NCBI GenBank assembly: GCA_965285935.1 | Contig: OZ260661.1 | Location: 143,716,001 to 143,780,000 of the forward strand | Direction of reading: 5' to 3' | Source of the DNA: Ophelia neglecta | Lineage: Eukaryota | Length of the DNA: 64,000 nucleotides | Shown here: piece after piece, positions 36,801-63,900 of the stretch | Numbering within the stretch: position 1 is the stretch's first letter | Layout of the letters: every line of letters begins with the position of its first letter | Made by a program: the position numbers and the translations under genes | The notes under the pieces: generated by a model | The model's input: the letters and a program-made list of their open reading frames with translations, nothing else | Told to the model about the DNA's origin: nothing | The model's database searches: none

Positions 36801-37049
36801 GTAGGGGTATATTCTCGACGGACCGTTCAAAGCTGGACGTAGGTGGCAATGGGCGGTGGAATGACTAAGTTTGTATTCTGCAGCAGCAACTGTGTCGCGG
36901 ACATTCCCATATGATTTAATAGAACTGGATGCTAGTCGTGATATGTATTTCCGTGCAACATCTTCCAAACCACTTGCACCAATAGTTAGTGAAATAAGAA
37001 GGACACAAGTCAAGGTCAAGTTCACCTGCGGCATTCTAGACGTTGGCAT
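30858..37049 (-). pseudogene. Full-length paralog of the GRL101-like receptor (signal peptide, CUB-like domains, C-type lectin, LDLa, LRR, 7TM); disabled
   Basis: Exons 37049-34323 and 33996-30858, with the intron at the same position as copy 1. Lesions: in-frame TGA at 36102-36104, in-frame TAG at 31756-31758 (K in copy 1), deletion of about 75 codons spanning TM3-TM4 near 31225, and a frameshift near 31125. Confidence 0.9.
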
Positions 37050-37339
37050 TTTACCTCCACTTTCAAAAGAAACTGTTGGTTTTCCAAACATACACTTTGA
37101 ATTCTTCCACTGTTTACGGAGAAAGGAGCGTTTTGGAAGTGTCTGAATATCTTGCAAAAAGTGGAACGAGATTGGCTCGAAGAAAACATGATAATATTAT
37201 AATTTGATATTTGCTCAGTGGTAAATTGAGATTGGCGAAGCAAACAATTAACAAGGATATCAAAATCAGTATGAATTAAGTGGCATATTATACAATGATC
37301 AAAATACCAAGAAGAGCCATTTAGAGGTTTAATACTACC

Positions 37340-45983: not shown

Positions 45984-47381
45984 TGTTTTTATTCACTTGT
46001 TACTTTAGCTGGAACCAGCTACCAACCACGAGCACACTTAGCATTGTACGGCTTTCGCTAGCTAGATGTGTTGCCTCGCGTCAACCGCTATGCCATGCCG
46101 CCATGAGCAATGCACTATCATCATTAGCACATCAGCCATCAGAGCGATAATTGCAAACAGACAGGGCCAGGAGTCCGCTGGTTATCTGTTTATTCGTTGC
46201 TGCATGTCAGTCGGTCGTTATATACAGGTGAGTCAGTAGTACCATATCAATTGCAAACTCACACTGGGGTCTGTTGGCGTCTGACAACTATCCGACCCAT
46301 ATTACACAATCTTATTCATTACAATCTGGTAGAATGGTAAACAGAGTTCACCTAGATTCGTCAAAACATCCTGTAGGACATTAAAGAAAGGCATTCTTAG
46401 AAAAAAACCCAGAAAGCACACGCAGTCAAGCCAAAAGAATATAATAAAGGGAAAAAATTACTTTCCGCAAAGGCCAGTGGGACATTGAAACTAGCCAAAT
46501 GTTGGGAGTACAGTCAAACCCTACTAGATATTTCCTGTAGCAAAACAGGTTGTTTAAAGACATAAAGTTCACAGCCCAAATCTACTAGTCTTAAACCTGG
46601 TAGCAACCGTTGTTATTACGAATACGTCTACACACGTGTAATAAAAAATGTGCCAAGGCACAGTTGTGAAGGCAACTTCAAGATGCGACCCGCAAAACGT
46701 CATGAATGCGAGTAGTTGACACTATAGCAGTGCGTCTAGTGTGATACCCCCTTAGTAGTATTATCATAAGTAACGGTGAGAAGTTACAGTTTCTATCTGC
46801 AGTAAGAATGCTCACATAATGGAAAAATATTCCATACATATTATCGGGGTATATCAAGTTTTTCCTTTTATCACGTTTAAGCCAAGTAAATCTATGGTTA
46901 TTGAAATATGTCGCCATTTGGATTATAACACCCCACAAGTCAGGTCGCTATGGCTTTAACCTGTATCCCTTTTCGTAGCATCACCAAATGTCACCGTTCT
47001 TTTTCCTCCTCACTCGAGAGGATCTCCAAAGTCGCCGAGCAATATATGTTTACTTGTTGGTTGAAACTTGCATACCAGAAAAGCTAATATCGAAGCAAAT
47101 CAACATTTAAAGTTAAAGTTTGCACACATTCTATGTAAACTGCGTGCATTAAGGCACAATATGATAATTATCCAATCTGTCTTAGTGATTGTTTATAGTA
47201 AGTTAAGGATGCCCGAAATCAAATAGTTTGCGGATATCGCTGACGTCATAAATAAGTATGCCCTTGAAAGGCGGCAATTTTCGTCTGTTAGTATAAGTCA
47301 TTTAACATGTTTATATTTACGCGGATTGATGTAATATTTATTTCTGAAAAGGCATATGATATATACATAAGTAGTGACAAG

Positions 47382-50300
47382 TGGCTTTATTAATTGCGCA
47401 GAGGCGCAGGGCAAATATATCGTCGAATCATATGGTAGCAGAGCGTAGTGGCGGCAGAACGGCGGAACTACGGAGGCAAATGCGTGGGTTACGTAGCGAG
47501 TTTTTTGACGTTCATCGGCAACTTGTCAATACGTATAAGTCCGAGAGACCATATCCTGGCGAACTATTTAATCTCAAAGATATGCTTGAGGAACTTTATG
47601 GTAGAATTAAACATGTGTCAGATCAGTTAATGTCAGAATACAGCGAGTGGGCTGAAGTGGATAAACAGGCAAAACACAAGGCAGAGTTCGCGGTGCTAGA
47701 ACGCATGTGCACAGAGGCAGAATATCACGTACAGCACAGATTGGATGAAATTAGTTCACAGTCTAGTTTCATTGATGAAACAAAACCGCATGTCAGAGAA
47801 ATTGAGAAACAAGTTATCGCACCATCGGGGGAAAGTATGGACAAAGAAAATAACTGGGTAGAGTATCTTGCTCAGTCACTATGTAAACATTTGGGTTTGA
47901 AGCCACATACAAATCCAGACAGGGATAATATTGCACAGGATGAATTTAGTGAGCCAGCTAGAGACAGGGTTCCTACTGATAGACCAAGGAGGGGACACAG
48001 CCTTAAAAAGCCTAGATACGCAAGGTTTTAGGCCTGAGAAGGCTTCCACTCCCTATGAGGAAATTTCTGCTTCGAAAAAGGTTGGTTTTGGGGCTTCAAA
48101 ATTCCACAAACTTGATTTGAGTAGTGATGAGGACAAAGAGACTGGCTAGTTATAAGCCATCAAGCATCAAGCAGGCCAATGCTGAGTGTATCAGATATGT
48201 TGCATGGATTTGGACAATTAGAAGGTATAACTGGTGTTGGAGCTGGAGTTGCTGAAATGGCACATAAAGCACAAACTGACAACCGATCTGGTGTAGCCAG
48301 CAGTGAAAGATATGTGCAGCGCATACCGCTTCCTGTGTTCCCTGGCGGGGAGGGCTTTGATGCATGGTGGAGCACCTTTGAGGCACTTGTGGATGAAACT
48401 GATGAGCCATCGAAAATCAAATTTCTTCGGCTGAAATATTTCCTTAAGGGTGAGCCATTAGACTTGATTAAGCATTTCCCATATGATGATTTCAGCTATG
48501 AAATGGCCAAAAAACAGTTGTATGAGAGCTATGGTGGACTGCTAAGGCAGTTAAATAGGCTGTACAGTGAGGTGCGGGAATTTAAACAGCTACAAGAACA
48601 TGATTATGTTGGAATGCGTCGGCTGCTGTCATTGGTAAACAGGACTGCTCGCCAGCTTCAGATTACGGGGCGAACTGGAGAAATAGGTCCAAGCCTACTA
48701 AATCACAGCTTGGTGGGGAAGATACATGTATCTACTGTATTTCGATACAATGACTGGCGATCAAACAAATTACTTGAGGACAACATGTTCTCACTTTCCA
48801 GATTCCTAGAAGAGCAAATTAGTAGAGGCACTATGGCACAGGAAACCGTGTTTGGAGTGAAGGGAAAAGTGAACCCTGGCTGCAGATCTGCAAGAACTAT
48901 GGCAAGTGTCCATGACGCCAATAAAAACCCTGAGTCAACTAGCCAAGCAGCAGGCAGCAGAAATGTGACCCGAAATAGGCACTGTCGCCTTTGTAGAGGG
49001 AATCATGCTCTCTGGGCATGTGCTCAGTTCAAGGAAATGTCCATACAAAGTCGATGGGACACTATGCGCAAATTACATGTATGTTTCAAATGCTTATCTG
49101 CCCAACATCTTTCTAAAGATTGTAAATATGATAGAATCTGTGGAGTTGATGGATGCGGATACAGGCAAAATCGCCTTCTGCATGATTCCAATAACCCTGG
49201 CCGGTCCCAGAGTAAGCCTGACAAGGGGAATCATGGACCAACTGTTAGTGATAGGTCTACAGAATTGGCCAACCAATCGGGGGATGGTATCAGGCTGACG
49301 CACCAAGGTGGAAGCTTGCCAGCAAGCAATACAGCAGAGCAGGCCCAAGTTCATAACACTGGACTGGAACGAGAAACAGTACCTAAGGCAACTATGGTGG
49401 CTAATAACACATATGAGTAAAGATTCTTAGCATTGAGAACATATGGTTTTCAGAATTACCGGACTTGGGTGATCTCAGATTGGCAAGGCCCCTAATAAAG
49501 CTAGAAAAGTGGCATGGGATGGCTTTGCATGCTTTTAGTGACGCGAGTGAGGAAGCATATGGAGCTGCCGTGTATCTCAGAGTTGAGTACTCAAACAAGG
49601 ATGTTGATGTGAATCTGGTAATTGCCAAGACTAAAGTAGCCCCTCTGACAAGCATATCCATACCTCGACTGGAGCTCCAGGGAGCTCATCTGGCAGTCCA
49701 AATTGTTGAAAAATTGGCCCCGGTGTTCAATCTTGATATATCTAAGGCAACATTCTGGACAGACAGTACAGATGTTTTGTTTTGGATTCATTCCCAGAGC
49801 AGAATATACAAACCTTATGTTGCAAACAGGGTTGGCCATATCCAGCAAATGACAGAGCCATCCAGCTGGAAACATGTACCAACCTCCTGTAACCCAGCGG
49901 ACTAACTCACCCGCGGAATGGCTGCAAAGAAACTTGAGCAGGATGGTAATTGGTGGCACGGACCAGAGTATTTACAGGGCGATGAATCAGTGTGGCCAAA
50001 ACAACCAGAACTTCTACAGCCTGATGTTGATCAAACTGATTGTAAAAAACAAAATTTGACATTTACAGCGATACAGGTGAATAAGGTGGTGGGCATTGAC
50101 AGTCTGAAGCAGGCTGGCATAGATCCAGGAAGCTTTTCAAAGCTTGAAGGTTTGATCAGAGTTTTAGCTTATATTAGGCGATTCATAGGCAAATGCCGAA
50201 GGCAACTAGTATTAGATGGAAAAGGCCAGGCTGTGGATGGCACGGAGTACAATGAGGCCAAATTGAAGTTGATCAGACTTGTACAAATGGAAACTTGGCC

Positions 50301-51776
50301 CCAAGAATATAAGATGTTACAGTCTGGTAACTGTGTGTCACCCAGATCAGAGTTGGCTCAGTTTGTTCCCAGGCTAGACAGTGATGGCTGCATTCGCAGT
50401 CAAACTCGAATGGAAAAGGCATATGAGGTGCCTTGGAGTACTCGCTTTCCATTGATTCTTCCTCGGCATGGGGTTCTAACAAAGCAGATGATTATGCACA
50501 TTCACGAGAGCAATGGCCACATTGGAGTAACACACACATTATGCGTTATTCAGGGAAGTGTATTGTGCAATTGCTGCCAGGGAGACTGTGAAATCCGTTA
50601 TTTATTTGTGTATGTTCTGCCATTTGCGGAAGAAACGCCCTGCAGAGCAACAGATGGCTCCGTTACCAATGCAGAGAGTCGAACTCACCTACCAACCATT
50701 CAAATACACCGCCATTGATTATGGAGGTCCGATACTTAATAAACAAGGCAGAGGGAAGACCAGAACAAAGAGATGGTTTTGTGTATATACCTGTTTGAGT
50801 GTGAGAGCTATACACATTGAACTTGCATATGATTTATCAACTGAGGGTTTTCTCCAAACCTTCAGTAGGTTTTGTGCCAGAAGAGGTGTGCCTACGGAAA
50901 TCCACAGTGATAATGGTAGTAATTTTGTTGGGGCACAAAGAGAGCTAGGAAAACTTATCAGATCCTTGGACACTCAAACCATACAACACACTACAGCCAG
51001 TAAAGGTGTGGTATGGAAATTCCTTCCCTCAGGAGCTCCACGCATGGGCGGCTCCCATGAGGTAATGATTAGGGCAGTGAAACGATCAATGAACAAAGTT
51101 CTCAGTCAGGCAGAAGTTTCAGATGATGAACTTCATACTGCCCTTGTAATCATTGAGGGCTTAGTTAACACTCGGCCAGTGACATATCAGAACTCGTGCA
51201 TTGATGAGCCCACTCCAATAACTCCAGGACATTTTCTGCATGGGAATGTGGCTACCGAGATACCAGTGCCCAATGCAGAAAACCTCAGGGAAAACAGTAG
51301 ACATCGGTGGCGGAGGGTGCAGGAAATAGTTCGCCATTGCTGGAGGAGATGGCTGATGGAATGGAGTTCCTGCACTAGGACCCAGATCAAAGTGTTGGAA
51401 AGAACATTCAAACTTTCGTGTAGGAGACATCGTTATGGTTCTTGATGCAACCAACCAACGAGGGTGTTGGCCGTTGGCTCGAGTAGAAGCATTACATCGT
51501 GGGTCGGACGGCAAGGTCCAAGTGGTGGATATCAAGCAAAAGCCCAAAGTATTCAGGAGGCCTTTAGTTAAATTAACTTAGTTAATGCTTGGTCGAAAAA
51601 AAATAACACATCCCTAAACAGGGAAGTTGTGGGCTGATGGATGTGAGTTGTAGGCCAGGCAGGCTTGGGCGATTCTGTGTATTTTTGACAGTGCGATATT
51701 GGCAATAAACACCCGAAATTTAACAAAACAAATGGCTTTATCAATTGCGCAGAGGCGCAGGGCAAATATATCGTCA
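47382..51776 (+). mobile_element. Degenerate BEL/Pao element with protease and RT deleted
   Basis: Gag (LPVFPGG..WWSTFEALVD, Cys/His knuckles) at 47480-49420; RNase H (FSDASEEAYG, WTDS, NPAD) at 49465-49905; integrase (IDYGGP, SDNGSNF, WPLARV) at 50558-51580; no YVDD region. Confidence 0.92.
47433..47449 (+). promoter_or_regulatory. Primer-binding site, initiator tRNA-Met type
   Basis: TGGTAGCAGAGCGTAGT lies just after ...GAATCA and before gag; TGGTAGCAGAG is complementary to the 3' end of animal tRNAiMet. Confidence 0.8.
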
Positions 51777-52315: not shown

Positions 52316-52639
52316 ATGGGTATTGGTATTATAATAGTAAAGACGATTTCATATGTGCACCAACTATTATCAAAACAGCAGCCAAAACGTCATTTAATAA
52401 TAAGCTCTAAGCTTTCGCTGTCAATTGTGCAATTATTTATTACACTTTATAATATTAATGTTTTGTGTATAAGGTATTATCCCGGGTGATACTGCGCATG
52501 CCTAAGCGCGCGCAATACAAATCCATTCCTGACTCAGCTGGAAAACTGGTCAGACGTGCCAGCGACGAGGCTCCTGTCTTAGACGTTTTCTCCACAACGG
52601 ATATAGGTAATATCACTTTCGTTGTTATTCAGCATGCCC

Positions 52640-52950
52640 GGGGGGCATTGCTGCTAAGTCCCTGGGGGACAAAAACATTGCCGGGGGCAATGTATTAGAT
52701 AAATATAGTAATTTTAAACTCAAGTCCCTGGGGGACAAAGACATTGCAGGGGGCAATGTATTAGATAAATATAGTAATTTTAAACTCAAGTCCCTGGGGG
52801 ACAAAGACATTGCCGGGGGCAATGTATTAGATAAATATAGTATTTTAAACTCAAGTCCCTGGGGGACAAAGACATTGCCGGGGGCAATGTATTAATCTAA
52901 TTAATTTGTTTAAGTCCCTGGGGGACAAAAGCTTTGCCCGGGGCAACGTT
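52640..52950. repeat. ~65-bp tandem repeat (about 4.5 copies) in the 5' region of the YR element
   Basis: Unit aagtccctgggggacaaagacattgccgggggcaatgtattagataaatatagtaattttaaactc. Confidence 0.95.
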
Positions 52951-54112
52951 TGTAATAAAATTCCTAGACAAAGCTTTACTAAGCTTTATTTATTTAAATA
53001 AACTAGTTCGATGTGTTATCGTATTTTAGCGTATATATCACCCCAAGTGTTATATTCTTGTACCTTATAATTAGGAGTCGGTTACAGGAATTGTGGTCCC
53101 ATTTGGTTTTATGTACCCAGATCTCTTTATGTTTGCAATTAATCCCAGTTATTGGTCAATATGAATGCTAAAGAGCTACGGCAGTGGACATCTAGATGCA
53201 TTATAGAAAGTGGCACTTTCGAACATGTATATTTGCTTAGCAAAACCCCAAGGCAAATCCAGTTAGCCGGGTATTCACAGACTTAATAAAACCACCTTTT
53301 CTATGTTCTGTGATGGCATTTGTCGTGTACAAAATTGTCGCTTTTATTGTTGAAATAATCGGGTCAGAAGTGACTGTGTGGTTTTGCCTGGTCAGCCTTT
53401 GTTACAAAATGTAAAAGCTTCACTTAACAGCTTTCACTCGGTAGGATTTTGGCGATATAGCTTATGTAACAGCAGGGTATGTTAACGAGGCATGACCTAC
53501 AGTTTATTTAAGACTTTAGATGCAGGTTGGCCAGGCTAGGCTAGGCCAAGGCTTGGCTCTACAATTCTTCTTGGCTACACAAATAGTCAACCCTTCTAGT
53601 TGACCACAAATAACTGTTGGTTACATTTAGCACATGCCCTCCTTTCCAGCTTTCTAGCCTTTTGGAAACATGTTAGAAATTCAGGTTGCAGTTTCTTGAT
53701 TTAAGGGCCTTGCATTTGGTTTAACTTTGACCTGTCATTGACTTTTGGCCTATATTGACAAAGGGATATAAAGAGTATTGATGCTTTATATTTCTAACGT
53801 TATACACATATAATTGTATATTAACATAATGTTACAGATATTTGATAAATAAAACCATTCTATTACATTGAGAACGTGCAGTAGGGGCGACCCACATTCT
53901 GGATCTTTCCTATTCTTCTGAAATATTTTCTTAACTGTTTTGTTAATTATTAATATTAACTGATCGGTGCTTGGCCATTTCTATTTTGGTGTAATTAAGG
54001 GTCCTTTTATCAAAACTATATTTTCAATACGTTGCATATCTGCTACGTAATAGATATGTTAACTTTTTCGATTTTATGGAAGGTATTTTACTTTTAATTT
54101 CTTTTCCGCAGG

Positions 54113-55353
54113 ATGGCTGCTGTAATAATCTTGAAAAAAGACCATAGCCTAGTGGGAAAAAGTCCATTCGCTGTAGTGATGGCGCTGAAAGAATTTGGGG
54201 GCATACTTCCCACTCCCTTGGCGAGGCTGAAACGCAGTCACCCGTTGGAAAATTACTCGTCTAATGATCTCATAGAGAATTTGGAGGGTATTATGGGTAT
54301 TCCGGCGACGGAAATCCTGACCTTGGCTCAGGTAGAGGGAGCGTCTGATCCCACACAAGTGCCGACAGAAAAGCTCCAATATGTGCTACATACTGCTATT
54401 GTCGAAGCAAATAGGGTAGGCCAACCTCAAGGAGTTACCCTGGTGAAAGAGAAGTAGGATACCCCACATCAAGAAGTTACTAGGAAAGAACCTACAAATG
54501 TATCTAACAAGGTAAAATTTTATTCTGCTTATACGAGAGTATGCTGTGAACGATTCGTAATAGGCCTATATATCTTTTAAGTCCACGCAGTTATTCTGTT
54601 ACATGTGAATCCCTTTGCATGAGACCGTTAAGTCGTCTTATTTAGTACATTTTAGGTGGGCCTATTTTATCACAATGGGCACTTCATTCTTTTCAGAGGA
54701 AAGACAGAGACGATGATTTAGAATCCAGACTAAAGTTGCTAGAACAGAAAATGGAACACGAGTCTGGGAGTGAAGTTGACCTGGCCTTACAACAGGTGAG
54801 GAGGTTACAGGGGTCAAGAGCCCTCATGCAGCCACACTTGGTAATCTCTAGTGTTGAGAATCTGGTCGAAGTAGCCCTACGGGTAAATCATCCCCAAGTT
54901 GAATATTTCAAGCGAGCTCTCCTGGAATTAAAAAAACACGAGGATGCAGAGGGCCTCGGACAGCTGCTAACTCAACTTTTTGGATCGCCCGAAGATAAAA
55001 AAGTTGCTACAGCGGTAACCGCCTGGCTTAAGGTGAAGAAAGCAGAAGAGGCGACTGGGCATTCCAAAAAAGATCAGCTAGAGGAAAGTGCTAAACCATA
55101 TCGGCACCCAGCACCAATGCCTCAGCCAGGCATGTTTCAAATGCCAGGGTTCCCACCTTTTCCAGACTACTTTCCACAACCCTACCCCGCTTATTACGGT
55201 GGCTTCGGACCCAGACGCGGCAGAGGTTCCTTTAGGCGCGGTAGAAGGGACCCCGCCCAGAGAATGGTGGCCAGATGTTATGGGTGCGACTCTGCAGATC
55301 ATAGGGTTGTGGACTGCCCTGTCATAAAAGCAATGAAAATTGAAAAAAAGTAG
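54113..55353 (+). CDS. Gag-like protein of the YR retrotransposon, predicted spliced (leader exon from 54113; exon 54697-55353)
   Basis: RG-rich segment and CCHC knuckle CYGCDSADHRVVDC; acceptor TTTTCAG|54697 is in frame; phase-0 donors at 54416, 54443 or 54512 (using 54512 includes the TAG at 54455). Confidence 0.75.
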
Positions 55354-55904
55354 ATATTGGAATATATATATAGACCTCATATTATAGAATCGACATCTAG
55401 AGAATTTAGACCATTGAATTTACTGTACGACCAACTTCGCCTATTAAATTAGATTCTTGCATTTCTTAGCATTTCGTCAGTCTTCTTTATCAGCACGCAA
55501 AAGGATCGTATATTTGAATATACCCAACTTAGACGTCATAGTTACCTTATTGGTAGTAAATACTATGTGGGATACGTATTAAAAAATTGGACTATAATGA
55601 GAAGTTCATAGTTTAAAGAATCGGCATCTTTGTTTAGTTATATTCTATTATATTATATTCAAATTTGATAGTCCTAGAATGTTTTTTGGAAACTAATTTA
55701 ATTTCTGACCCAATTGCTACTACTTCTAAAATTTAAAGTAGTAAATATTTGAGGCAAGAATACCTGCCCACCCCGGCAAGTTTCCGCCCCAACCAAAAGG
55801 TACCTAAAACACCTTAGTGGAGGCTATCCTTCACGCTGGTTGGAAGCTGGAGCCTTGTTGGGAATTCAACCACACGGAGTTATCATATCTTAATCATTTT
55901 GTAG

Positions 55905-58151
55905 GTATCAGGCAATGGTGATTACGTAACCTCGGATGAAAAACCGTCCCCAGAACCAACGTTCGACCCACAAAAGGCAGCTAAAAGGGTAAGAACAGCT
56001 CCGGTGTGGGTGGATTCCCAGGGAAAACGGCTCCAGCCCCAACCAGATACGCCTCCAACAGCCGAGCAAGTGGCCACGCCTAATACAGACACACCTAGTA
56101 TTTCAATTTTGGCATTCAGGGATCCTGAAAACTTCATTGCCGGCGAACTTCACAACCAAGCGGCGGAATGGGAAAAAATCCTCCCCCAAACTGAAGTGGG
56201 CAAGGAAGCATTAGATTGGATTTTGCGTGGGGTGTGCATTCAAAATTACTTTCAACCCTATCGAGGAAAATTTAGAGGGAAACAGTACAATGCTGAGTTG
56301 CCACAAAAATATTGCCAACCTAATAACGCCTCCTGTGTGGGGCATGAAAGTTTCATTTCCGACACCTTGCAAGAGTGGATCGAGTGCGGAGCAATTCAGC
56401 TATTAGGGAAAGTCGGGGAAGTACAACCACCACTTATGGTCATGCCATTGACTGTCGAACCATCGAAACCCAGACTTTGCCATGATGAACGTTTCCTGAA
56501 CTTATGGATAAAAGACCTCCCTTTCAATCTCGATACCCTTAAAGATGTTCCTAGAATTGTTCACAAAAACTTTTTTCTCACCTCCCTCGATCACAAATCC
56601 GGTTATCAACATGTCAGGCTTAACCCAGAAAGCTACAAATACTTCGGCATTTGTTGGGAAGGGTACTATATGGTATATGTGACTCCTCCATTTGGTTTCA
56701 AAGCAAGTTGCTACATCTATCACACCCTGACCGGTTTAGTGGCCTCATATGGCAGAGAATTGGCAGTCCCCACTTTGGCTTATATAGATGACTCTTTGAA
56801 CTCGCAGTTCGCCAACTCTTTGAAAGATAGGCTAGATAATTACCAGAATGCTGCAAATTTAAACGAGGCTCTGAGGTCTCTGTATATTATGTGTCAATTA
56901 TGGACAAGGCTAGGTTATACCATTTCATTGAAGAAGAGCGTTCTTATCCCGACTCAAATCATCCGCTTTCTGGGTCTGCTCACAGACAGCACTCTTGAAG
57001 CTTTTATCCTCCCACAAGACAAAAAAGAGTCATTTGCCACTCTTAGAGAAGCTATCCTCAAAAACCGCACAGTAGATATGAAGTCTTTGCAGAGACTTCA
57101 AGGAAAGTGTATATCGTTGACACTAGCTGTACCTGGAGCAAGGCTTTACATATCTGAAATGTCAAAAGCCATTTCATTGGCAGCTAAGAATAGCAGGTGT
57201 ATATCATTGGCAGGTGGCTTGAGAGAAGAAATTGAGCACTGGCGTTTTGTCGACACCTGGCAAGGTTGCGTCCCTTGGAGACAGGAAATGCACCTGCAAA
57301 TGGCAATGGCCACGGATGCTTCTAACTTTAAGTGGGGAGCTATGTTCTTGGATGTAAAAGGCCATCCAAATGAAGAGATAGGAGATTTTTGGCCCCAGGA
57401 AGATGATCGCCCTATACACCTAAAAGAAGCCAGTGCCCTTCTACAGGCCCTCCGGTCGGTCAGGAAGAATATTCAAGATCACAGAGTGGATGCATTTGTA
57501 GATAATATGGCAGTCCTGTCCGCGTGGAATGGACAGAAAGCCAAGGATGCCAGGCTAACAAGTCTTATAAAGAAAATTTTTTGTTTCACTCAACTGGCCA
57601 ACTTAGATCTCCGCCTGCACTTTGTACCTAGCCAGGAGAATCCCGCGGATGCACCATCAAGAAAACTCAGTTGGTTGGATGCCATGCTGGCGCCGGAAAT
57701 TTGGGAATTAGTAGATGGCAGATTTGGACCCCACTCAGTAGATTTGATGGCCTTAGATAGTAATGCTATGCAAAGATGTGGAAAACCTCTCAAGCACTTT
57801 ACCCCTTACCCCACTCCTTTGTCTGATGGGGTAAACGTATTCTCACAAGACATCTCCAAAGAACAGGCGCCATATGTATACCCACCCCTTAGCTTGGTGG
57901 GACCTCTCTTGAAGTTTCTCTGTGAGAGCAATATTCAGGCATGCACTTTTGTAGTCTTTGATGTGGTCCCAAGGCCATATTGGTGGCCCCTGCTGAAACA
58001 ACACGTGTCCGACACTTTGATACTCGGCGAGCAGGGAGAAAAGGGAGTTCTTTTGGTACCTACAAAATCTGGTTATGTTCGAGATACCTTTGGTCTTCGG
58101 TTTCCCCTGATTGCATTCAAACTTGTTTTTGGAGCGGTTTCAACTCAATAG
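55905..58151 (+). CDS. RT, RNase H and N6-adenine-methyltransferase-like protein
   Basis: SLDHKSGYQHV, PFG, AYIDD, FLG; RNase H ATDAS, HLKE, VDN, NPADAPSR; MT-like VDLMA..FSQD..YVYPP. The frame opens right after TTTTGTAG. Confidence 0.93.
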   Translation, partial: VSGNGDYVTSDEKPSPEPTFDPQKAAKRVRTAPVWVDSQGKRLQPQPDTPPTAEQVATPNTDTPSISILAFRDPENFIAGELHNQAAEWEKILPQTEVGKEALDWILRGVCIQNYFQPYRGKFRGKQYNAELPQKYCQPNNASCVGHESFISDTLQEWIECGAIQLLGKVGEVQPPLMVMPLTVEPSKPRLCHDERFLNLWIKDLPFNLDTLKDVPRIVHKNFFLTSLDHKSGYQHVRLNPESYKYFGICWEGYYMVYVTPPFGFKASCYIYHTLTGLVASYGRELAVPTLAYIDDSLNSQFANSLKDRLDNYQNAANLNEALRSLYIMCQLWTRLGYTISLKKSVLIPTQIIRFLGLLTDSTLEAFILPQDKKESFATLREAILKNRTVDMKSLQRLQGKCISLTLAVPGARLYISEMSKAISLAAKNSRCISLAGGLREEIEHWRFVDTWQGCVPWRQEMHLQMAMATDASNFKWGAMFLDVKGHPNEEIGDFWPQEDDRPIHLKEASALLQALRSVRKNIQDHRVDAFVDNMAVLSAWNGQKAKDARLTSLIKKIFCFTQLANLDLRLHFVPSQENPADAPSRKLSWLDAMLAPEIWELVDGRFGPHSVDLMALDSNAMQRCGKPLKHFTPYPTPLSDGVNVFSQDISKEQAPYVYPPLSLVGPLLKFLCESNIQACTFVVFDVVPRPYWWPLLKQHVSDTLILGEQGEKGVLLVPTKSGYVRDTFGLRFPLIAFKLVFGAVSTQ

Positions 58152-58185
58152 ACTATGCATAATTAGTGTGTTCTCATTGTTGCAG

Positions 58186-59406
58186 GGCAATGAAAGTCAT
58201 GACTGCGAGGATGTAGATGTCGCCCCACTGGATTTCCGTCTTCGGGAAATTGAGAGGAAAGCAAAGTCCACACCCTATGAGCGTAAAAAAGAAGCATTAG
58301 CCAAAGAACTGGACAGTTTTTTGCATCGCTTACCAGGCAAACCAACGCTCAAAACTATGGATGACAGAGACCTCAGACGGTTTTTAGTATTCAAAGACGG
58401 CAAGGGGAAGACTGTTGTCCATACAACCTTGTGCCCTCTATTAGGACAGCGGGATCCAGGGGACTGTGGGTGCCCAAGGAGGCTTACAGCGGGTACTGTT
58501 ATATCCATGGTAGGTCAGCTTAAGGCTTTTCTACAAAGGCTCGGTAGGGGTAGTGCGTGGGATGAGCTCAAAACAGAAGGCAACCCCGCTTACGCCTCCT
58601 CCGTTTCAGAATATGTAAGAGTAATACAGAAAGAGCATGCAATCGCTCACGTATCTCCCAAACAGGCGAAACCATTATTTGTTGAAAAATTGGAAAAAGT
58701 GTGTGACTATTTAAAACGTGAGAGCGAATGCGTATGTTCATCGGCAAAAGATAAGTTTATGTATCTACGAGATAGAGCCTTTATGACAGTCCAATTTTTT
58801 GCCGGCGACCGAGCCAGTGATCTCTGCAAGACGTTGGCGCAAGAGATCAAGAGGTTACCTGATGGTACCGGCTTTGTAGTAAACCACACGCAAGGGAAAA
58901 CGGCCAGCTCTTCTTCGCCGAGGGTTGTGTACATAAAGAAATGCGAGAATAGAAAAATCTGTCCTGTAACTAGCCTTGAAGACTATGTCTCGGCAGCATC
59001 ACGAATGGGTGTTGATTTGAAGACCGGGTACATATTTCGAAAAACAAATAAACATGGACAGGTTTTGCAGTTCCCAATAACGTATGATGCAGCTCATGAT
59101 CAACTTAAGAAATACTTGCGTCAATTAGGTGAATATGACGGGGAAACCCCCCACAGCCTTAGAGGGGGTTGTGCTGTTACCATGCTCCTTACAGGAGCAG
59201 CAGAGACTGTCGACGAAGCTCAAGCTCACATTGGATGGAAATCAACTACCATGCCAGACAGGTATGCACGTGCGAAAGGGGCTCAAACTTTGAGAGCCAG
59301 TGAAAAGTTGAGGAAAGCCATAGATAACGAGTCAAGCGTTACGGCCAAGGATGCTAGTAAATTATTTGGCGGTCTTGAGTACCATGAACTAGATAATGCC
59401 TTTTAA
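58186..59406 (+). CDS. Tyrosine recombinase
   Basis: Catalytic set R (GDRASDL), K (GKT), HxxR (PHSLRGG), H/W (HIGW) and Y (DRYA) all present; acceptor TTGTTGCAG|58186 is in frame. Confidence 0.93.
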   Translation, partial: GNESHDCEDVDVAPLDFRLREIERKAKSTPYERKKEALAKELDSFLHRLPGKPTLKTMDDRDLRRFLVFKDGKGKTVVHTTLCPLLGQRDPGDCGCPRRLTAGTVISMVGQLKAFLQRLGRGSAWDELKTEGNPAYASSVSEYVRVIQKEHAIAHVSPKQAKPLFVEKLEKVCDYLKRESECVCSSAKDKFMYLRDRAFMTVQFFAGDRASDLCKTLAQEIKRLPDGTGFVVNHTQGKTASSSSPRVVYIKKCENRKICPVTSLEDYVSAASRMGVDLKTGYIFRKTNKHGQVLQFPITYDAAHDQLKKYLRQLGEYDGETPHSLRGGCAVTMLLTGAAETVDEAQAHIGWKSTTMPDRYARAKGAQTLRASEKLRKAIDNESSVTAKDASKLFGGLEYHELDNAF

Positions 59407-60130
59407 TAATGATTTATTTCTTGGTCTGAAGGAGAAATTACAATAGAAAAACACCGACACCGTTATACACTTAACAACTAATGACTGTCATTTAAAAATA
59501 TGGATTTATGTAAACTAATTGTATATATTTTATTCAGAGGTTGTAATAATGTTGAATGAAAATAAAATTTGGTCATTCCAGTTTTCCCTTAGCTGTTTGT
59601 AATAAGGTTTGGGAGGGGAATAACTCTAGCTGTTGTTTCCAAATGGAAAAACTGGGAAAAGCGACGTTCAAACCTCCAATCCTGTTGACTTCCCCCACAC
59701 CTTAAACCAAGAGCCAAGGCAGGGGCGGTATCACCCGGGATGTTATTATATCCCGGGTAATACTGCGCATGCCTAAGCGCGCGCAATACAAATCCATTCC
59801 TGACTCAGCTGGGGAGAAGTGAAGTCGGGTAGAGCAGAGAGTGTGTTTTAAGTTTAATTATAGTGTATTAACGCCAACAAAATTTAGCCTGGAGAAAGTT
59901 ACCCACCCAACACCCCACCCGGTCAAGGTATATGCCACTGCTTTGGCCCTCCAGTCCTGTTGACTTCCCCCACACCTTAAACCAAGAGCCAAGGCAGGGG
60001 CGGTATCACCCGGGATGTTATTATATTATGATTTTAAGAACTATTTGTAGAACCCGTTTTTCATTTAAATAATATATGTTATATTATATTAAGTGACATC
60101 TTTGGAACGTTGCCTGCAATTATTATTAAT

Positions 60131-60338
60131 TATTATCAAAACAGCAGCCAAAACGTCATTTAATAATAAGCTCTAAGCTTTCGCTGTCAATTGTGCAATT
60201 ATTTATTACACTTTATAATATTAATGTTATGTGTTTAAGGTATTATTATGATTTTAAGAACTATTTGTAGAACACGTTTTTCATTTAGATAATATATGTT
60301 ATAATATATTAAGTGACATCTTTGGAACGTTGCCTGCA
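60131..60338. repeat. Uninterrupted copy of the ~210-bp sequence into which the YR element inserted
   Basis: Matches 52365-52480 joined to 60027-60118 with only a few substitutions. Confidence 0.95.
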
Positions 60339-60754
60339 TGAAGCATTATCTTTTTGAAGCATTCGGTATAAGATAAAAGGAGGTTCCCATTTCTTATATA
60401 CATGTTCATTAGTGACGTTAAGCCGGGTGGTACGATTATAATGATTAACCTTTAAATGCATTTATTAATATTTATTTCCAGGAAATAGCTAAATTACCAG
60501 ATTTGACTTCAAATATGTGTATAAAATGTTTATTTTGATCATATTGTTTTTCGAGAAAATTGGATAAATATTGCGTAGCAGGACAAAAGTCGGCATATGT
60601 TCATATCTCAAGCATAAGTAGTATTACCTAGCAGTCTTCTGGTGCCGATCACTGCTATACAATACACATACTACTCGATAGGATACACAAAGTGGGGGCT
60701 CTATTTCTTTCACGTAGACACCGGAACGTCATTTAAGAAAGTGATAATAATAGT

Positions 60755-60929
60755 AATAACATGATATTGACGGGTGTTACGCTACTTCAGTGTCCCTCCA
60801 TAAATTATTAGCAGCCCTTCATAGTCATAGCACCCTCGGCTACGCCTCGGGCGCTATGACTATGGCGGGCTGCTAATAATTTATGTCGGGCCACTGATAT
60901 AGCGTAACGCCCTGCAAAATCATGTTATT
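60755..60929. mobile_element. ~175-bp palindromic (fold-back) element
   Basis: Arms aataacatgat..gggtgttacgcta..ataaattattagcagccc..catagtcatagc and their reverse complement flank a central cctcggctacgcctcggg. Confidence 0.8.
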
Positions 60930-63900
60930 GGTATATTGTCCATCATTATACTTTCATAATCGGCATCATCGCTTTGCTTTGTATTCTGGGGTTGCTCTCT
61001 GTGCGGTACAGCATAATCATCGCTCACTGAGTTAATTTCAGCTTTGCTTTTAGCACCTGCATTTTTGGATTTGTCGACCTCAGCATTCACATGATATTCT
61101 GTATTTTCAAGAGCCACAGTTACATCCTGATACTCAGTATCAACAGATTCGTGGTTACTGTAAACGTTAGAGCCGTTTGTCAGGGTGTGTGAAGTGTGAA
61201 CGCCATAGCATGTATTGTTAGAAACAGTATAGCTTGGCCCTTCTGATCAATTTTTTCCTATTCTGTGGATGTAAGCAGAACTTATAATAGTAAGTTATGT
61301 ATTTAATTTAACAAATTGCATATTTGCATCAATAAGTAGAGTAACAGTATCAGCTTTATTTAATTTTTCTGGGTGGCCCTCTTGGTAGCGTCCATTGGGA
61401 CTTAGTGGAGGTCTCCCAACCAAACTAATCTCTCGATTGCAAATACTTATTTTGTTAATAATTGTCTTTGTGTAGCATTATGGTTGGAATATATATATTT
61501 TTTGCATGTTATTATTGATTTGGTTGAATAAAAGTTCAGTTCAGTTCAGTTCAGTACTATCTCCAAAGTAGGTGCATATTGCTTAAATCTCTACCTTTGT
61601 TTCCGAAGAACAAAGATCAACACAATGACTAGTAGTGCAGCGACAATGACTACTACTCCTACTCCTAGACCAATAAAGATGCCTTGCCCTGGAAGTTTAT
61701 AGTTGTTTACTGCTTTCATCATTTGAGTTGAAAATTAATTCTATGATTATTATCTTATCGATGTATAAAATGCCGCCTTGGATTGTAATTCATAAGGTGT
61801 CGGAAACAAAATAGCCTTTAAATGATTATTGTTCATATAATATATACATTATTTATCGAAACAAAAACCAAGCCTTTTTTAGGAAATCGTGTGATATGTT
61901 TAAGTGGCCACTCTAACATGCCTTCACAACTGACAATGTCTTGGTATAATCTTTTAAAAGTTATATCTATTAGATAACGTACCCTTGTTCTGAGCCTGGG
62001 AAGTGGTAGTTACATCAGTATTTTTCTTTGAAATCGAGGTGGTAAAACGTAAACTAGAGGTTAGGCGTTCGTCCTCTGTGGTTGTAAGATGGTTAGTCAA
62101 TTCGGTCGCCGTAAAACTAAAGGCTATAAACAGAAATTGTGAAATGCCGAAACGAGATTGGGAAACGGAACAGACTAGGTGTCATGCATGGTAATTGTAG
62201 TATACTAGTAATGTTATATGGCCGCTTGGCTTGTATTAGTGTGTCTGTATGATTGGCATTTAAAATAGGGTCAATAATAGAATTCCTATTGTTGTTTACA
62301 CAATTTATATAACGCTGAATCAATAAAACATACCCTTAAGCAGGTTACAATCAATAAAGTAGGTTATAAAAAAGTGATAACAAATAATGAATCAATGGAC
62401 AGAGTAAGAAGCCTGCACGCTCATAGTGTCTCCTGGCATTTGAAAGCCAGATGGTCATAGTGTCTCCTGGCATTTGAAAGCCAGATGGTCATAGTGTCTC
62501 CTGGCATTTGAAAGCTAGCTGGTCATAATGTCTCCCGGCCTTTGAAAGCTAGCTGGTCATAATGTCTCCCGGCCTTTGAAAGCTAGCTGGTCATAATGTC
62601 TCCCGGCCTTTGAAAGCCAGATGGTCATAATGTCTCCCGGCCTTTGAAAGCCAGATGGTCATAATGTCTCCTGGCATATGAAAGCCAGATGGTCATAGTG
62701 TCTCCTGGCATTTGAAAGCCAGATGGTCATAATGTCTCCTGCCTTTGAAAGCTAGCTGGTCATAATGTCTCCTGGCATTTGAAAGCCAGATGGTCATAAT
62801 GTCTCCTGCCTTTGAAAGCCAGCTGGTCATAATGTCTCCTGCCTTTGAAAGCCAGATGGTCATAATGTCTCCCAGCCTTTGAAAGCTAGCTGGTCATAAT
62901 GTCTCCCGGCCTTTGAAAGCCAGATGGTCATAATGTCTCCCGGCCTTTGAAAGCCAGATGGTCATAATATCTCCCGGCCTTTGAAAGCTAGTTGGTCATA
63001 ATGTCACCTGGCATTTGAAAGCCAGATGGTCATAATGTCTCCCGGCCTTTGAAAGCTAGCTGGTCATAATGTCTCCTGGCCTTTGAAAGCTAGATGGTCA
63101 TAATGTCTCCTGCCTTTGAAACCAGATGGTCATAATGTCTCCTGCCTTTGAAAGCCAGATGGTCATAATGTCTCCTGCCTTTGAAAGCCAGATGGTCATA
63201 ATGTCTCCTGGCATTTGAAAGCCAGATGGTCATAATGTCTCCTGCCTTTGAAAGCCAGATGGTCATAATGTCTCCTGCCTTTGAAAGCCAGATGGTCATA
63301 ATGTCTCCTGCCTTTGAAAGCCAGATGGTCATAATGTCTCCTGCCTTTGAAAGCCAGATGGTTATAATGTCTCCTGGCATTTGACCGAGTATAGTTACAC
63401 CCCATATAATTCAAGCCATTTAGCAAATAGTCTAGACTCAGAATAACTGCATGGTATTTATATAGATGTGGAGAAAATCTATATTTCTATTCAATTTGAA
63501 TACTTAGTTTATCATTTTATTTTAAGTGCACTGAACTATACTGCAGGCTTTTAGCAAATCTTAAAGGAATTTATCCTATTCGCCACAGGAAACCAATGTA
63601 CATTCCACAGTGCGGATGTGATGACGTTTAAAGGCATCTTCGACTAGACAAGATACTGAATTTTCAAAATCGGAAAACGCCCTATTACCCTGAAAGGCCC
63701 ACGAGAAACCCCTACCTTAGTCCATTCGGATAATGATTAGTGTTTTGAAGGCACTGTATGTCATGTAAAGACCGATACGGTAAAAGTACAATTAAGGCCT
63801 CTACAAACAACAGAAAAAAAGAACCAAAGCCGCCTACGTCTATCATCAGGTGTCCCTGTTGTCTTGAACGCATCTACTTTCTCCTCCGATTTCGTAGCGT

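What the first reader, a model, noticed from the sequence alone, without database searches (positions are those of the whole stretch)
52607..59406. Tyrosine-recombinase retrotransposon that appears to express gag, RT and recombinase by splicing one leader exon to three acceptors
Seen: an ATG-initiated leader ORF (54113) ends near phase-0 GT donors (AGG|GTAGGC 54416, CTG|GTGAAA 54443, AAG|GTAAAA 54512). Each downstream ORF starts right after a pyrimidine-tract AG in phase 0: gag (ttcattcttttcag|54697), RT-RH-MT (aatcattttgtag|55905) and YR (ttctcattgttgcag|58186). The RT frame opens directly after the acceptor's TAG and has no ATG for over 150 codons; the first YR ATG is about 57 codons past its acceptor. 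The three ORFs do not overlap once the acceptors are used, and gag and RT are separated by an AT-rich intron-like spacer. Known: DIRS-order elements usually have overlapping ORFs, and retroelements normally lose introns. Inference: a retrovirus-like strategy in which an unspliced genomic RNA is copied while three mutually exclusive mRNAs give all proteins the same ~100-130 aa N-terminal tag, possibly for co-assembly. I cannot confirm that this is undescribed.
Basis: partly seen in the sequence, partly recalled or inferred. Interest (0 to 1): 0.9.

Follow-up and report, generated by a model that had tools for sequence, protein, structure and literature searches.

The report
Pat1-like retrotransposon apparently expressed by splicing
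This is a complete 7.5-kb tyrosine-recombinase (Pat1-like, DIRS-order) retrotransposon whose gag, reverse-transcriptase and recombinase frames each start at a splice acceptor conserved across related elements, so its proteins are probably made by alternative splicing, which I found described nowhere for this element class.

Summary
The element is larger than stated: 7,546 bp (about 52479-60026), with split direct repeats (A1..B1A2..B2), no target duplication, and a paralogous empty site beside it.

It is an echinoderm-form Pat1-like element. It has a Gag with a CCHC knuckle, an RT/RNase H/methyltransferase-like ORF and an ALOG-tyrosine recombinase.

In 75 related loci, the best acceptor-like site before gag-core, RT and YR is in phase 0 in 14/17, 12/14 and 18/20 cases (control 32%). 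Relative frames and spacer lengths vary, so no frameshift or readthrough is conserved.

The "leader" is not a separate tag. It is a folded N-terminal Gag domain (pLDDT 93.5; 68 relatives).

The best-supported shared donor is not at the leader's end. It is CAG|GTGAGG at 54795/54796, 33 codons into gag. This is the top-scoring donor in the element and it is conserved in the near clade. Two bivalve RefSeq models switch from Gag to RT at this point.

Leader-to-YR joining is inferred only. This copy has one in-frame stop in exon 1 if the distal donor is used. No transcript data could be examined.

Verdict: splicing strategy supported, details revised, and no description found in the searchable literature.

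The parts
52479..60026 (+). Whole Pat1-like YR retrotransposon (7,546 bp; ends ambiguous by 2 nt of AT microhomology); no target-site duplication
   Evidence: The flanks 52362-52480 and 60024-60118 match the adjoining empty paralogous unit at 60128-60338 (97%). They rejoin to it exactly. It is the only copy in the window.
52478..52541 (+). Terminal repeat A1 (same as A2)
   Evidence: 64 nt, 98% identical to 59749-59812.
52656..52977 (+). Five copies of a 66-nt tandem repeat in the 5' non-coding region; each holds an 8-bp-stem hairpin motif. Possible promoter, enhancer or RNA signal.
   Evidence: Function not tested.
54092..54112 (+). Pyrimidine tract plus AG one base before the start codon: putative acceptor of a 5'UTR intron (donor not identified; 53477 is a 7/9 candidate)
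   Evidence: The same signal lies 0-2 nt before the leader ATG in L001, L011 and L070. It also shows as translated Y-tract plus CAG before the Met in P0131, P0132 and P0136.
54113..54511 (+). Exon 1: ATG-initiated 'leader', i.e. the N-terminal Gag domain plus linker, read to the distal donor AAG|GTAAAA. Alternative weaker donors end the exon at 54415 or 54442. One in-frame stop in this copy if read to the distal donor, none with the proximal donors.
   Evidence: 68 relatives at E<=1e-3. AF2 pLDDT 93.5. Homologous exon ends in L001, L011 and L046 are phase-0 GT donors 4-42 codons past the conserved domain.
54512..54696 (+). Intron 1 (185 nt; 254 nt if the 54442 donor is used)
   Evidence: The acceptor ending at 54696 is in phase 0. 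A homologous phase-0 acceptor precedes the gag core in 14/17 relatives.
54697..54795 (+). Exon 2: 33 codons of acidic/coiled-coil-like Gag sequence, phase 0 at both ends. Proposed to be shared by the Gag, RT and YR mRNAs.
   Evidence: Alignment A3. P0044 and P0158 share 26 identical residues ending at this column and then diverge.
54796..54801 (+). Alternative 5' splice site CAG|GTGAGG inside gag (read through as Val-Arg in Gag)
   Evidence: Unique best donor of 394 GT sites in the element. The near clade is 6/6 MAG|GTRAGR at the same column. P0057 and P0044 switch to RT here.
54697..55353 (+). gag core frame (no break), with a CX2CX4HX4C zinc knuckle at 55276-55317
   Evidence: The knuckle was read directly from the sequence.
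55354..55904 (+). AT-rich spacer between gag and RT. It is the 3' part of the proposed 1,109-nt intron 54796-55904.
   Evidence: GC 0.33-0.39. Relatives have spacers of 62-654 nt with variable relative frame.
55905..58151 (+). RT / RNase H / methyltransferase-like ORF (no break). RT about 56556-56978, RNase H about 57297-57566, MT-like about 57621-58148. It opens at the acceptor's TAG and its first Met is residue 178.
   Evidence: Pfam. 291 homologues at E<=1e-10. The MT-like model has pLDDT 90.4 and best Foldseek hits to SAM-dependent methyltransferases. A phase-0 acceptor is found in 12/14 relatives.
58186..59406 (+). YR exon (no break): ALOG-type N-terminal domain about 58267-58629, catalytic domain about 58747-59274. 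The acceptor ends at 58185 and the first Met is residue 58, inside the ALOG match.
   Evidence: Pfam ALOG 8e-16 and Phage_integrase 6e-8. A phase-0 acceptor is found in 18/20 relatives, most with no in-frame ATG upstream of the conserved start.
59561..59566 (+). AATAAA downstream of the YR stop
   Evidence: Use not tested.
59673..59812 (+). Internal repeats B1 (59673-59751) and A2 (59749-59812). Their junction forms 25-nt imperfect inverted arms (59717-59741 and 59750-59774) around an 8-nt spacer, a lox/FRT-like site.
59948..60026 (+). Terminal repeat B2 (same as B1, 99%)
60128..60338 (+). Paralogous empty target site (neighbouring unit of a ~220-bp host tandem repeat)

Best explanation
The locus is a young, nearly intact echinoderm-form Pat1-like (DIRS-order) retrotransposon.

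Proposed expression scheme:
- One promoter in the 1.6-kb 5' region gives a full-length transcript. Unspliced, this transcript is the template for reverse transcription, so all introns are kept in new copies.
- For translation, a 5'UTR intron is removed. Its acceptor lies right before the ATG at 54113.
- Exon 1 (the folded N-terminal Gag domain) is joined to exon 2 (54697-54795).
- If the strong donor at 54795|54796 is not used, translation runs on through the gag core to the CCHC knuckle.
- If it is used, exon 2 is joined in phase 0 to 55905, giving N-Gag fused to RT/RNase H/MT-like.
- Alternatively it is joined to 58186, giving N-Gag fused to the ALOG-tyrosine recombinase.
- Splicing would thus set the Gag:Pol:YR ratio. 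It would also give the enzymes the Gag N-terminal domain and coiled-coil segment, the likely means of incorporating them into Gag assemblies. This is a splice-made counterpart of Gag-Pol.
- Integration would be by YR recombination between the lox/FRT-like B1|A2 junction of a circular or junction-bearing intermediate and a target with a similar AT-rich core, leaving no duplication.

Shown here:
- Element anatomy and limits.
- Conservation and phase of the three acceptors.
- Conservation and strength of the gag-internal donor in the near clade.
- The leader is a conserved folded Gag domain.
- RefSeq models exist with exactly these Gag-to-RT joins.

Inferred:
- That these sites are actually spliced in this host.
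- That YR uses the same donor.
- The co-assembly role.
- The recombination mechanism.
For: Anatomy:
- Split direct repeats and the empty site.
- Domains.

No own start codons:
- First Met in the RT ORF is at residue 178. In the YR exon it is at residue 58, inside the ALOG match.
- The gag core frame in relatives often opens at the acceptor itself.

Acceptors:
- In phase 0 in 14/17, 12/14 and 18/20 relatives, against 32% in controls.

No conserved recoding:
- gag-to-RT relative frames are 0:4, 1:2, 2:4, with spacers of 62-654 nt.
- RT-to-YR relative frames are 0:2, 1:3, 2:4.

Donor at 54796:
- Best of 394 GT sites in the element.
- The homologous site ranks in the top 1-5 in L001, L004, L011 and L070.
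- The near clade is 6/6 MAG|GTRAGR.

Gene models:
- P0057 (XP_062568476, Saccostrea cucullata) is leader homologue (pairwise E 8e-6, HMM 1e-20) plus linker plus coiled-coil, then RT, joined at that column.
- P0158 (XP_069114013, leader+Gag) and P0044 (XP_069137272, isoform X1, RT), both Argopecten irradians, share 26 identical residues and diverge exactly there.

Leader:
- 68 relatives, nearly all N-terminal short ORFs. P0158 and P0162 are continuous with Gag.
- pLDDT 93.5.
- Leader exon ends in L001, L011 and L046 are phase-0 GT donors.
- L046 and L070 carry an additional phase-1 intron inside the leader.
Against:
- No model or ORF joining the Gag N-terminus cleanly to YR was found. P0207, which holds leader, gag, RT and YR pieces, looks like an ab initio chimera.
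- Among the 120 listed RT homologues only 2 carry a leader.
- In more distant families the gag-internal column keeps Val (GTN) but with weak donor context, or is Leu with no GT. The donor position is therefore not universal.
- Some families have an ATG just after the YR acceptor.
- The window's exon-1 donors are mediocre (6-7/9), and this copy has one in-frame stop in exon 1 if the distal donor is used.
- Splice scoring used a simple consensus count and pyrimidine fraction, not a trained model.
Confidence: 0.65

Rival explanations
1. A donor at the end of the leader ORF (54415, 54442 or 54511) is joined directly and exclusively to one of three acceptors (54697, 55905, 58186). Exon 2 then belongs to Gag only, and the shared tag is the leader alone.
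For: All these junctions are in phase 0, so every combination keeps frame. Leader-exon donors are conserved in L001, L011 and L046.
Against: - The three RefSeq models place the Gag/RT switch after the coiled-coil segment, not at the leader's end.
- 54796 is a far better donor than any at the leader's end.
- The leader is continuous with Gag in P0158 and P0162.
Confidence: 0.15
2. No cis-splicing to RT and YR. They are translated from separate transcripts (internal promoters in the gag-RT spacer and near the RT end) or from the full-length RNA by non-AUG initiation, internal entry or reinitiation. The acceptor-like motifs would then be incidental to AT/pyrimidine-rich spacers.
For: The spacer is long and AT-rich. 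Some relatives have an ATG just after the YR acceptor. No transcripts were seen.
Against: - Phase-0 bias of the best AG site at all three blocks, p from 2e-7 to 8e-5, against 32% in controls.
- Conserved protein sequence begins only 6-66 nt after the AG and well upstream of any Met.
- RefSeq models show Gag-RT joins.
Confidence: 0.1
3. The acceptors are used for spliced-leader trans-splicing, resolving a polycistronic element RNA into separate capped mRNAs, as in operons of some invertebrate phyla.
For: Each coding block is preceded by an acceptor. The founding PAT element comes from nematodes, which trans-splice (own knowledge).
Against: - RT and YR lack start codons near the acceptor, so the trans-spliced leader would have to supply an in-frame AUG.
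- Relatives occur in bivalves and amphioxus, where, to my knowledge, SL trans-splicing is not known.
- Conserved cis donors exist.
- The host of this window is not identified.
Confidence: 0.05
4. A decayed or rearranged copy. The spacer and the missing start codons would be damage, and the splice-like motifs chance.
For: One in-frame stop in exon 1 under the distal-donor reading.
Against: - gag core, RT/RH/MT and YR frames have no breaks.
- Repeats are 98-99% identical.
- The same layout is found in L001 and many relatives at 40-57% protein identity.
Confidence: 0.03

Closest known systems
Pat1-like elements, echinoderm form (e.g. SpPat1 of the sea urchin), PAT group of the DIRS order (described in PMC4157794 and PMC3266345)
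   Same: - Split direct repeats A1..B1A2..B2, with the internal repeats downstream of YR.
- Gag with a zinc knuckle.
- RT/RNase H followed by a methyltransferase-like domain.
- YR in the same orientation.
- No target-site duplication.
   Different: The accessible descriptions do not mention introns, a separate upstream Gag exon or splice-dependent RT and YR frames. PMC3266345 has no occurrence of 'intron' or 'splic'. No sequence of a named reference element was compared here.
Ogre LTR retrotransposons of legumes (PMC6317226, citing Neumann 2003 and Steinbauerova 2008)
   Same: [quoted passage not shown] Splicing therefore controls Pol expression, while intron-containing RNA is propagated.
   Different: - Ogre is a Ty3/gypsy LTR element with a DDE integrase and one intron.
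- Here several introns are proposed, with two alternative acceptors (RT, YR), and the donor lies near the start of gag, so most of Gag is skipped.
Ty1/copia alternative splicing in Arabidopsis (PMC5580714) and BARE (PMC3735527)
   Same: Alternative splicing of a retroelement RNA sets the Gag:Pol ratio. Distinct RNA pools serve translation and replication.
   Different: There, splicing yields a Gag-only subgenomic RNA from a single gag-pol ORF. Here the unspliced-at-donor form gives Gag and the spliced forms give the enzymes.
Retroviral subgenomic mRNAs; spumaretroviral Pol from its own spliced mRNA (own knowledge; cf. PMC5294762)
   Same: A common 5' exon is joined to alternative downstream acceptors, and unspliced RNA serves as the genome.
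   Different: - Retroviral leaders are mostly non-coding.
- Here the shared exons encode about 143-166 residues of Gag, so the products would be Gag-N fusions.
- Different element class: YR instead of integrase, no LTRs, no env.

Membership tests
DIRS order (tyrosine-recombinase retrotransposons) | Reverse transcriptase plus RNase H related to Ty3/gypsy-type | tested here: met
   RVT_1 4.7e-5 and RT_RNaseH 3e-3, both below Pfam cut-offs. 291 homologues at E<=1e-10, many flagged PF00078. The YIDD and DAS motifs are readable.
DIRS order (tyrosine-recombinase retrotransposons) | Tyrosine recombinase instead of a DDE integrase; no protease | tested here: met
   Phage_integrase 6.3e-8 (above cut-off) and ALOG 8.4e-16. 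Weak XerC/XerD matches. The R..HxxR..Y residues are readable. No protease or rve domain is found in the element ORFs.
DIRS order (tyrosine-recombinase retrotransposons) | Insertion without target-site duplication | tested here: met
   The flanks rejoin exactly to the paralogous empty site.
PAT group / Pat1-like, echinoderm form | Split direct repeats A1..B1A2..B2, with B1A2 downstream of YR | tested here: met
   A1 52478-52541 matches A2 59749-59812 (98%). B1 59673-59751 matches B2 59948-60026 (99%).
PAT group / Pat1-like, echinoderm form | Methyltransferase-like domain after RNase H | tested here: met
   The conserved C-terminal ~175 residues model at pLDDT 90.4. Best Foldseek hits are SAM-dependent methyltransferases: KsgA, and the cap adenosine MTase at TMq 0.61, prob 1.0. 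E-values are only about 2e-3, and there is no sequence-level PDB or NCBIfam hit. This is fold-level support only.
PAT group / Pat1-like, echinoderm form | Zinc-finger (CCHC) motif in Gag | tested here: met
   CX2CX4HX4C at 55276-55317. It aligns with the knuckles of P0158 and P0162.
PAT group / Pat1-like, echinoderm form | Phylogenetic placement of RT/YR with reference Pat1 elements | not tested
   No reference element sequence was available through the tools, so no tree was built.
DIRS1-like | Inverted terminal repeats plus an internal complementary region | tested here: not met
   The termini are split direct repeats. Only ~25-nt inverted arms occur at the extreme ends and the junction.
Ngaro | Split direct repeats but no methyltransferase-like domain | tested here: not met
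   An MT-like domain is present.
Splice-regulated retroelements (Ogre-type / retrovirus-type expression) | Conserved donor and acceptor sites bounding the inter-ORF regions, in compatible phase | tested here: met
Splice-regulated retroelements (Ogre-type / retrovirus-type expression) | Spliced and unspliced transcripts both observed | not testable with these tools
   No transcript data. The only evidence is indirect, from RefSeq gene models.

The most novel reading that the evidence does not exclude
A widespread metazoan clade of Pat1-like YR retrotransposons (bivalves, coral-holobiont assemblies, amphioxus and this host) runs a retrovirus-like alternative-splicing programme.

- Reverse transcriptase and the recombinase are made as fusions to a novel-fold N-terminal Gag domain plus coiled-coil. 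These would be splice-made 'Gag-Pol' and 'Gag-YR' proteins.
- Intron-containing RNA is the transposition template.
- Introns are gained and lost between families.
Probability: 0.45. Interest if true: 0.75.

Novelty: new variant of a known kind. Interest (0 to 1): 0.62.

Why it matters
How DIRS-order elements express their downstream ORFs has been an open point. These ORFs are often non-overlapping and lack start codons.

A conserved splice-based scheme would explain three things:
- how the elements set Gag:enzyme ratios;
- how RT and YR reach Gag assemblies;
- how a retroelement keeps several introns through many rounds of reverse transcription.

It also matters for annotation. ORF-based TE pipelines miss the upstream Gag exon. 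Gene predictors produce mixed models from these loci (P0207, P0101, P0094).

The leader domain has a confident predicted fold with no detectable structural relative, so it is worth a structural look.

Tried and rejected
Exon-intron structure of those models could not be read.
I did not resend those sequences.

Searches that found little or nothing:
- The third protein search (P0057, region 1-150), meant to find leader-RT and leader-YR fusions, returned only P0057 itself.
- The leader HMM found a leader in only 4 of the 75 related loci. Many contigs are short or the families are too distant.
- No locus had Gag N-terminus and RT contiguous in the way a processed copy would. The one shared segment (L016) is a decayed copy. 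L056 is decayed.
- The leader has no Pfam, NCBIfam, PDB-sequence, PDB-fold or BFVD-fold match.
- Rfam found no family at gathering score in the window.
- Eight literature searches, with text look-ups in thirteen papers, found no description of introns or splicing in DIRS, PAT or Ngaro elements. The key subscription reviews (Goodwin & Poulter 2001 and 2004; Poulter & Goodwin 2005; Poulter & Butler 2015) are not held, so prior description cannot be excluded.

Ideas rejected:
- A short RT-YR intron. The donors are weak, and in L004 only 23 nt separate the RT stop from the YR acceptor.
- Arg-codon choice at the donor as evidence. AGR is 64% of Arg codons in the element, so 6/6 is not significant by itself.

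- Exons were searched and folded one by one. The joined exon products were neither built nor searched.
Conservation is given as counts.

- This was written before I read that end as a possible break.
- My working notes on it were more specific than the rule allows.
Full report
OBSERVATION

- Donors have their first intron bases at 54416, 54443 and 54512. All are in phase 0 with the ATG at 54113.
- Acceptors end at 54696, 55904 and 58185. Exon starts are in phase 0 of the gag, RT and YR frames.
- The RT frame opens at the acceptor's TAG, and its first Met is residue 178. The first Met after the YR acceptor is residue 58. That lies inside the ALOG match, which starts about 27 codons past the acceptor.
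- The gag-RT spacer has GC 0.33-0.39.

ELEMENT LIMITS AND CLASS

The element is wider than the finding.
- A1 (52478-52541) equals A2 (59749-59812). B1 (59673-59751) equals B2 (59948-60026). Identities are 98-99%. This is the A1..B1A2..B2 split-direct-repeat layout.
- The host flanks 52362-52480 and 60024-60118 are a copy of the adjoining uninterrupted unit 60128-60338 and rejoin to it exactly.
- So one 7,546-bp unit (about 52479-60026, ±2 nt of AT microhomology) was inserted without target duplication. That unit includes the leader, all proposed introns and the spacer.
- The B1|A2 junction carries 25-nt imperfect inverted arms around an 8-nt spacer, like a lox/FRT site. The target resembles that spacer.

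Coding content:
- Gag has a CX2CX4HX4C knuckle (55276-55317).
- The RT ORF has RVT_1 and RT_RNaseH matches.
- Its conserved C-terminal domain models at pLDDT 90.4. Best structural matches are SAM-dependent methyltransferases: KsgA, and the cap adenosine MTase at TMq 0.61 and prob 1.0, with E only about 2e-3.
- YR has ALOG plus Phage_integrase domains.

By the criteria in PMC4157794, this is an echinoderm-form Pat1-like element of the PAT group. It is neither DIRS1-like (no ITR/ICR) nor Ngaro (MT-like domain present).

THE LEADER IS PART OF GAG

A full HMMER pass of the 114-residue leader over 1.84 billion representatives gave 68 hits at E<=1e-3, 17 of them at E<=1e-10.
- Nearly all hits are short ORFs with the leader at their N-terminus. 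That is the pattern expected for an exon running into an intron.
- P0158 (XP_069114013, Argopecten irradians, 350 aa) and P0162 (Tegillarca granosa) are continuous. They run leader, low-complexity linker, coiled-coil segment, Gag core, CCHC knuckle.
- The leader models with pLDDT 93.5 and pTM 0.83.
- It has no match by sequence or fold in Pfam, NCBIfam, PDB or BFVD.

ACCEPTORS ARE CONSERVED

An RT alignment retrieved 75 related loci from marine-invertebrate and coral-holobiont assemblies.

For each locus I anchored the conserved start of the gag core, RT and YR with profile HMMs. I then ranked every AG between the frame opening and that start by upstream pyrimidine content.
- The top site is in phase 0 in 14/17 (gag), 12/14 (RT) and 18/20 (YR) distinct contexts. 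Binomial p is 5e-5, 8e-5 and 2e-7.
- In 427 control ORF openings on the opposite strand the figure is 32%.
- Strong phase-0 sites occur in 67% of observed cases against 8% of controls.
- These sites lie 6-66 nt (gag, RT) upstream of where protein conservation begins. Several relatives, like the window, open the frame at the acceptor's own TAG.
- Most relatives have no in-frame ATG between the YR acceptor and the conserved start.

NO CONSERVED RECODING

- Relative frames vary. gag-to-RT is 0:4, 1:2, 2:4 with spacers of 62-654 nt. RT-to-YR is 0:2, 1:3, 2:4, mostly without overlap.
- In L001, RT and YR are even in the same frame, whereas in the window they are not.
- Frameshifting or readthrough cannot be the general mechanism.

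DONORS

Exon 1:
- The leader exon ends in phase-0 GT donors in L001 (8/9), L011 (8/9) and L046 (8/9), 4-42 codons past the conserved domain.
- In the window the only donor scoring at least 7/9 there is 54511|54512, also phase 0. Read that far, this copy's exon 1 contains one in-frame stop.
- I cannot tell which donor is used.

The gag-internal donor:
- The strongest donor of the whole element is CAG|GTGAGG at 54795|54796, 33 codons into the gag frame. It is the unique best of 394 GT sites.
- At the homologous column the near clade (window, L001, L041, L004, L011, L070; RT identity 37-57%) is 6/6 MAG|GTRAGR. The site ranks in the top 1-5 in four of the five relatives.
- In Gag it is read through as Val-Arg.
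- More distant families keep Val with weaker context, or have Leu. The donor position is therefore clade-specific.

GENE MODELS

- P0057 (XP_062568476, Saccostrea cucullata) begins with a leader homologue (pairwise E 8e-6, leader HMM 1e-20). It continues through linker and coiled-coil, then switches to RT at exactly that column.
- P0044 (XP_069137272, A. irradians, isoform X1) shares its first 26 residues identically with residues 135-160 of the Gag model P0158. It then diverges into RT at the same column.
- In all three cases RT sequence starts 18-22 codons before the first conserved RT-ORF motif. This matches the window's acceptor at 55905.
- I could not see the evidence behind these models.

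FURTHER INTRONS

- A pyrimidine tract plus AG lies 0-2 nt before the leader ATG in the window, L001, L011 and L070. It is visible as translated tract plus CAG in several leader ORFs. This suggests a 5'UTR intron whose donor I did not identify.
- L046 and L070 carry an extra phase-1 GT..AG interruption inside the leader, where the window's leader is continuous. Intron content therefore differs between families.

MECHANISM

See Best explanation. All proposed junctions are in phase 0, so exon 1, exon 2, RT and YR can be combined freely.

I rate splice-dependent RT expression at about 0.75, the same for YR at about 0.6, and 54795|54796 as the main shared donor at about 0.65.

State of this copy:
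- gag core, RT/RH/MT and YR have no breaks.
- Exon 1 has one in-frame stop under the distal-donor reading and none under the proximal one.
- Among relatives, the leader of L001 lies in two frames, from one frameshift or an assembly error.

COMPARISON AND NOVELTY

The element itself is a new member of a known group. The expression scheme resembles several known systems:
- Ogre, where an inter-ORF intron is spliced in a subset of transcripts (PMC6317226);
- Ty1/copia and BARE (PMC5580714, PMC3735527);
- retroviral subgenomic mRNAs.

I found no description of such a scheme for DIRS, PAT or Ngaro elements in the held literature. The main subscription reviews could not be read.

LIMITS AND RULES

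- Exons were analysed one by one. The joined products were left out.
- No contig looked human.
- Splice scoring was a simple consensus and pyrimidine count.
- The host species was not identified. The surroundings are TE-rich invertebrate DNA.

Noticed in passing
window 59717-59774: The B1|A2 junction forms 25-nt imperfect inverted arms around an 8-nt AT-rich spacer, like a lox/FRT site. The insertion target (empty copy at about 60228-60262) resembles the spacer.
   Followed up: partly
window 52656-52977: Five tandem 66-nt repeats lie in the element's 5' non-coding region. Each holds a GC-rich 8-bp-stem hairpin motif. They could be promoter, enhancer or RNA-signal repeats.
   Followed up: no
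window 54113-54454 (model m0ba7742bbdf0): The N-terminal Gag ('leader') domain gives a very confident model (pLDDT 93.5, pTM 0.83). It has no Foldseek match in PDB or BFVD and no sequence-family match.
   Followed up: yes
L046:1724-2739 and L070:3230-3528: Relatives carry an extra phase-1 GT..AG interruption inside the leader domain that the window's element lacks. This is intron gain or loss between families of a retroelement.
   Followed up: partly
window 52362-52480 and 60024-60338: The host target is a ~220-bp tandem repeat. One unit is filled by the element and the next is empty (97% identical), which gives a built-in empty-site control.
   Followed up: yes
window 18807-24485 (+) and 47381-51445 (+): These are BEL/Pao-type LTR retrotransposon coding regions (DUF1759, Peptidase_A17, Integrase_H2C2; DUF1759 and a weak rve match). 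The second ends about 1 kb upstream of the Pat1-like element.
   Followed up: partly
window 667-3999 (+), 31756-37157 (-): Very long uninterrupted ORFs carry LDL-receptor class A, leucine-rich-repeat and CUB domains. They look like paralogous host genes or gene fragments. Their identity and the host species were not determined.
   Followed up: no
window 62421-63384; 60750-60934: A 34-nt satellite of about 29 copies (93% matches) lies at the first position. A 91-nt-arm near-perfect palindrome (82%, 3-nt loop) lies downstream of the element.
   Followed up: no
P0204, P0207, P0209, P0218, P0228 (relatives' YR proteins): Many related recombinases carry a CxxC..CxxC zinc-ribbon-like motif right after their acceptor, N-terminal to the ALOG domain. 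The window's YR lacks it.
   Followed up: no
P0207, P0101, P0094, P0031 (public gene models): Ab initio models in Mytilus and Branchiostoma stitch pieces of leader, gag, RT and YR into single proteins. These elements therefore confuse gene predictors and inflate proteomes.
   Followed up: partly
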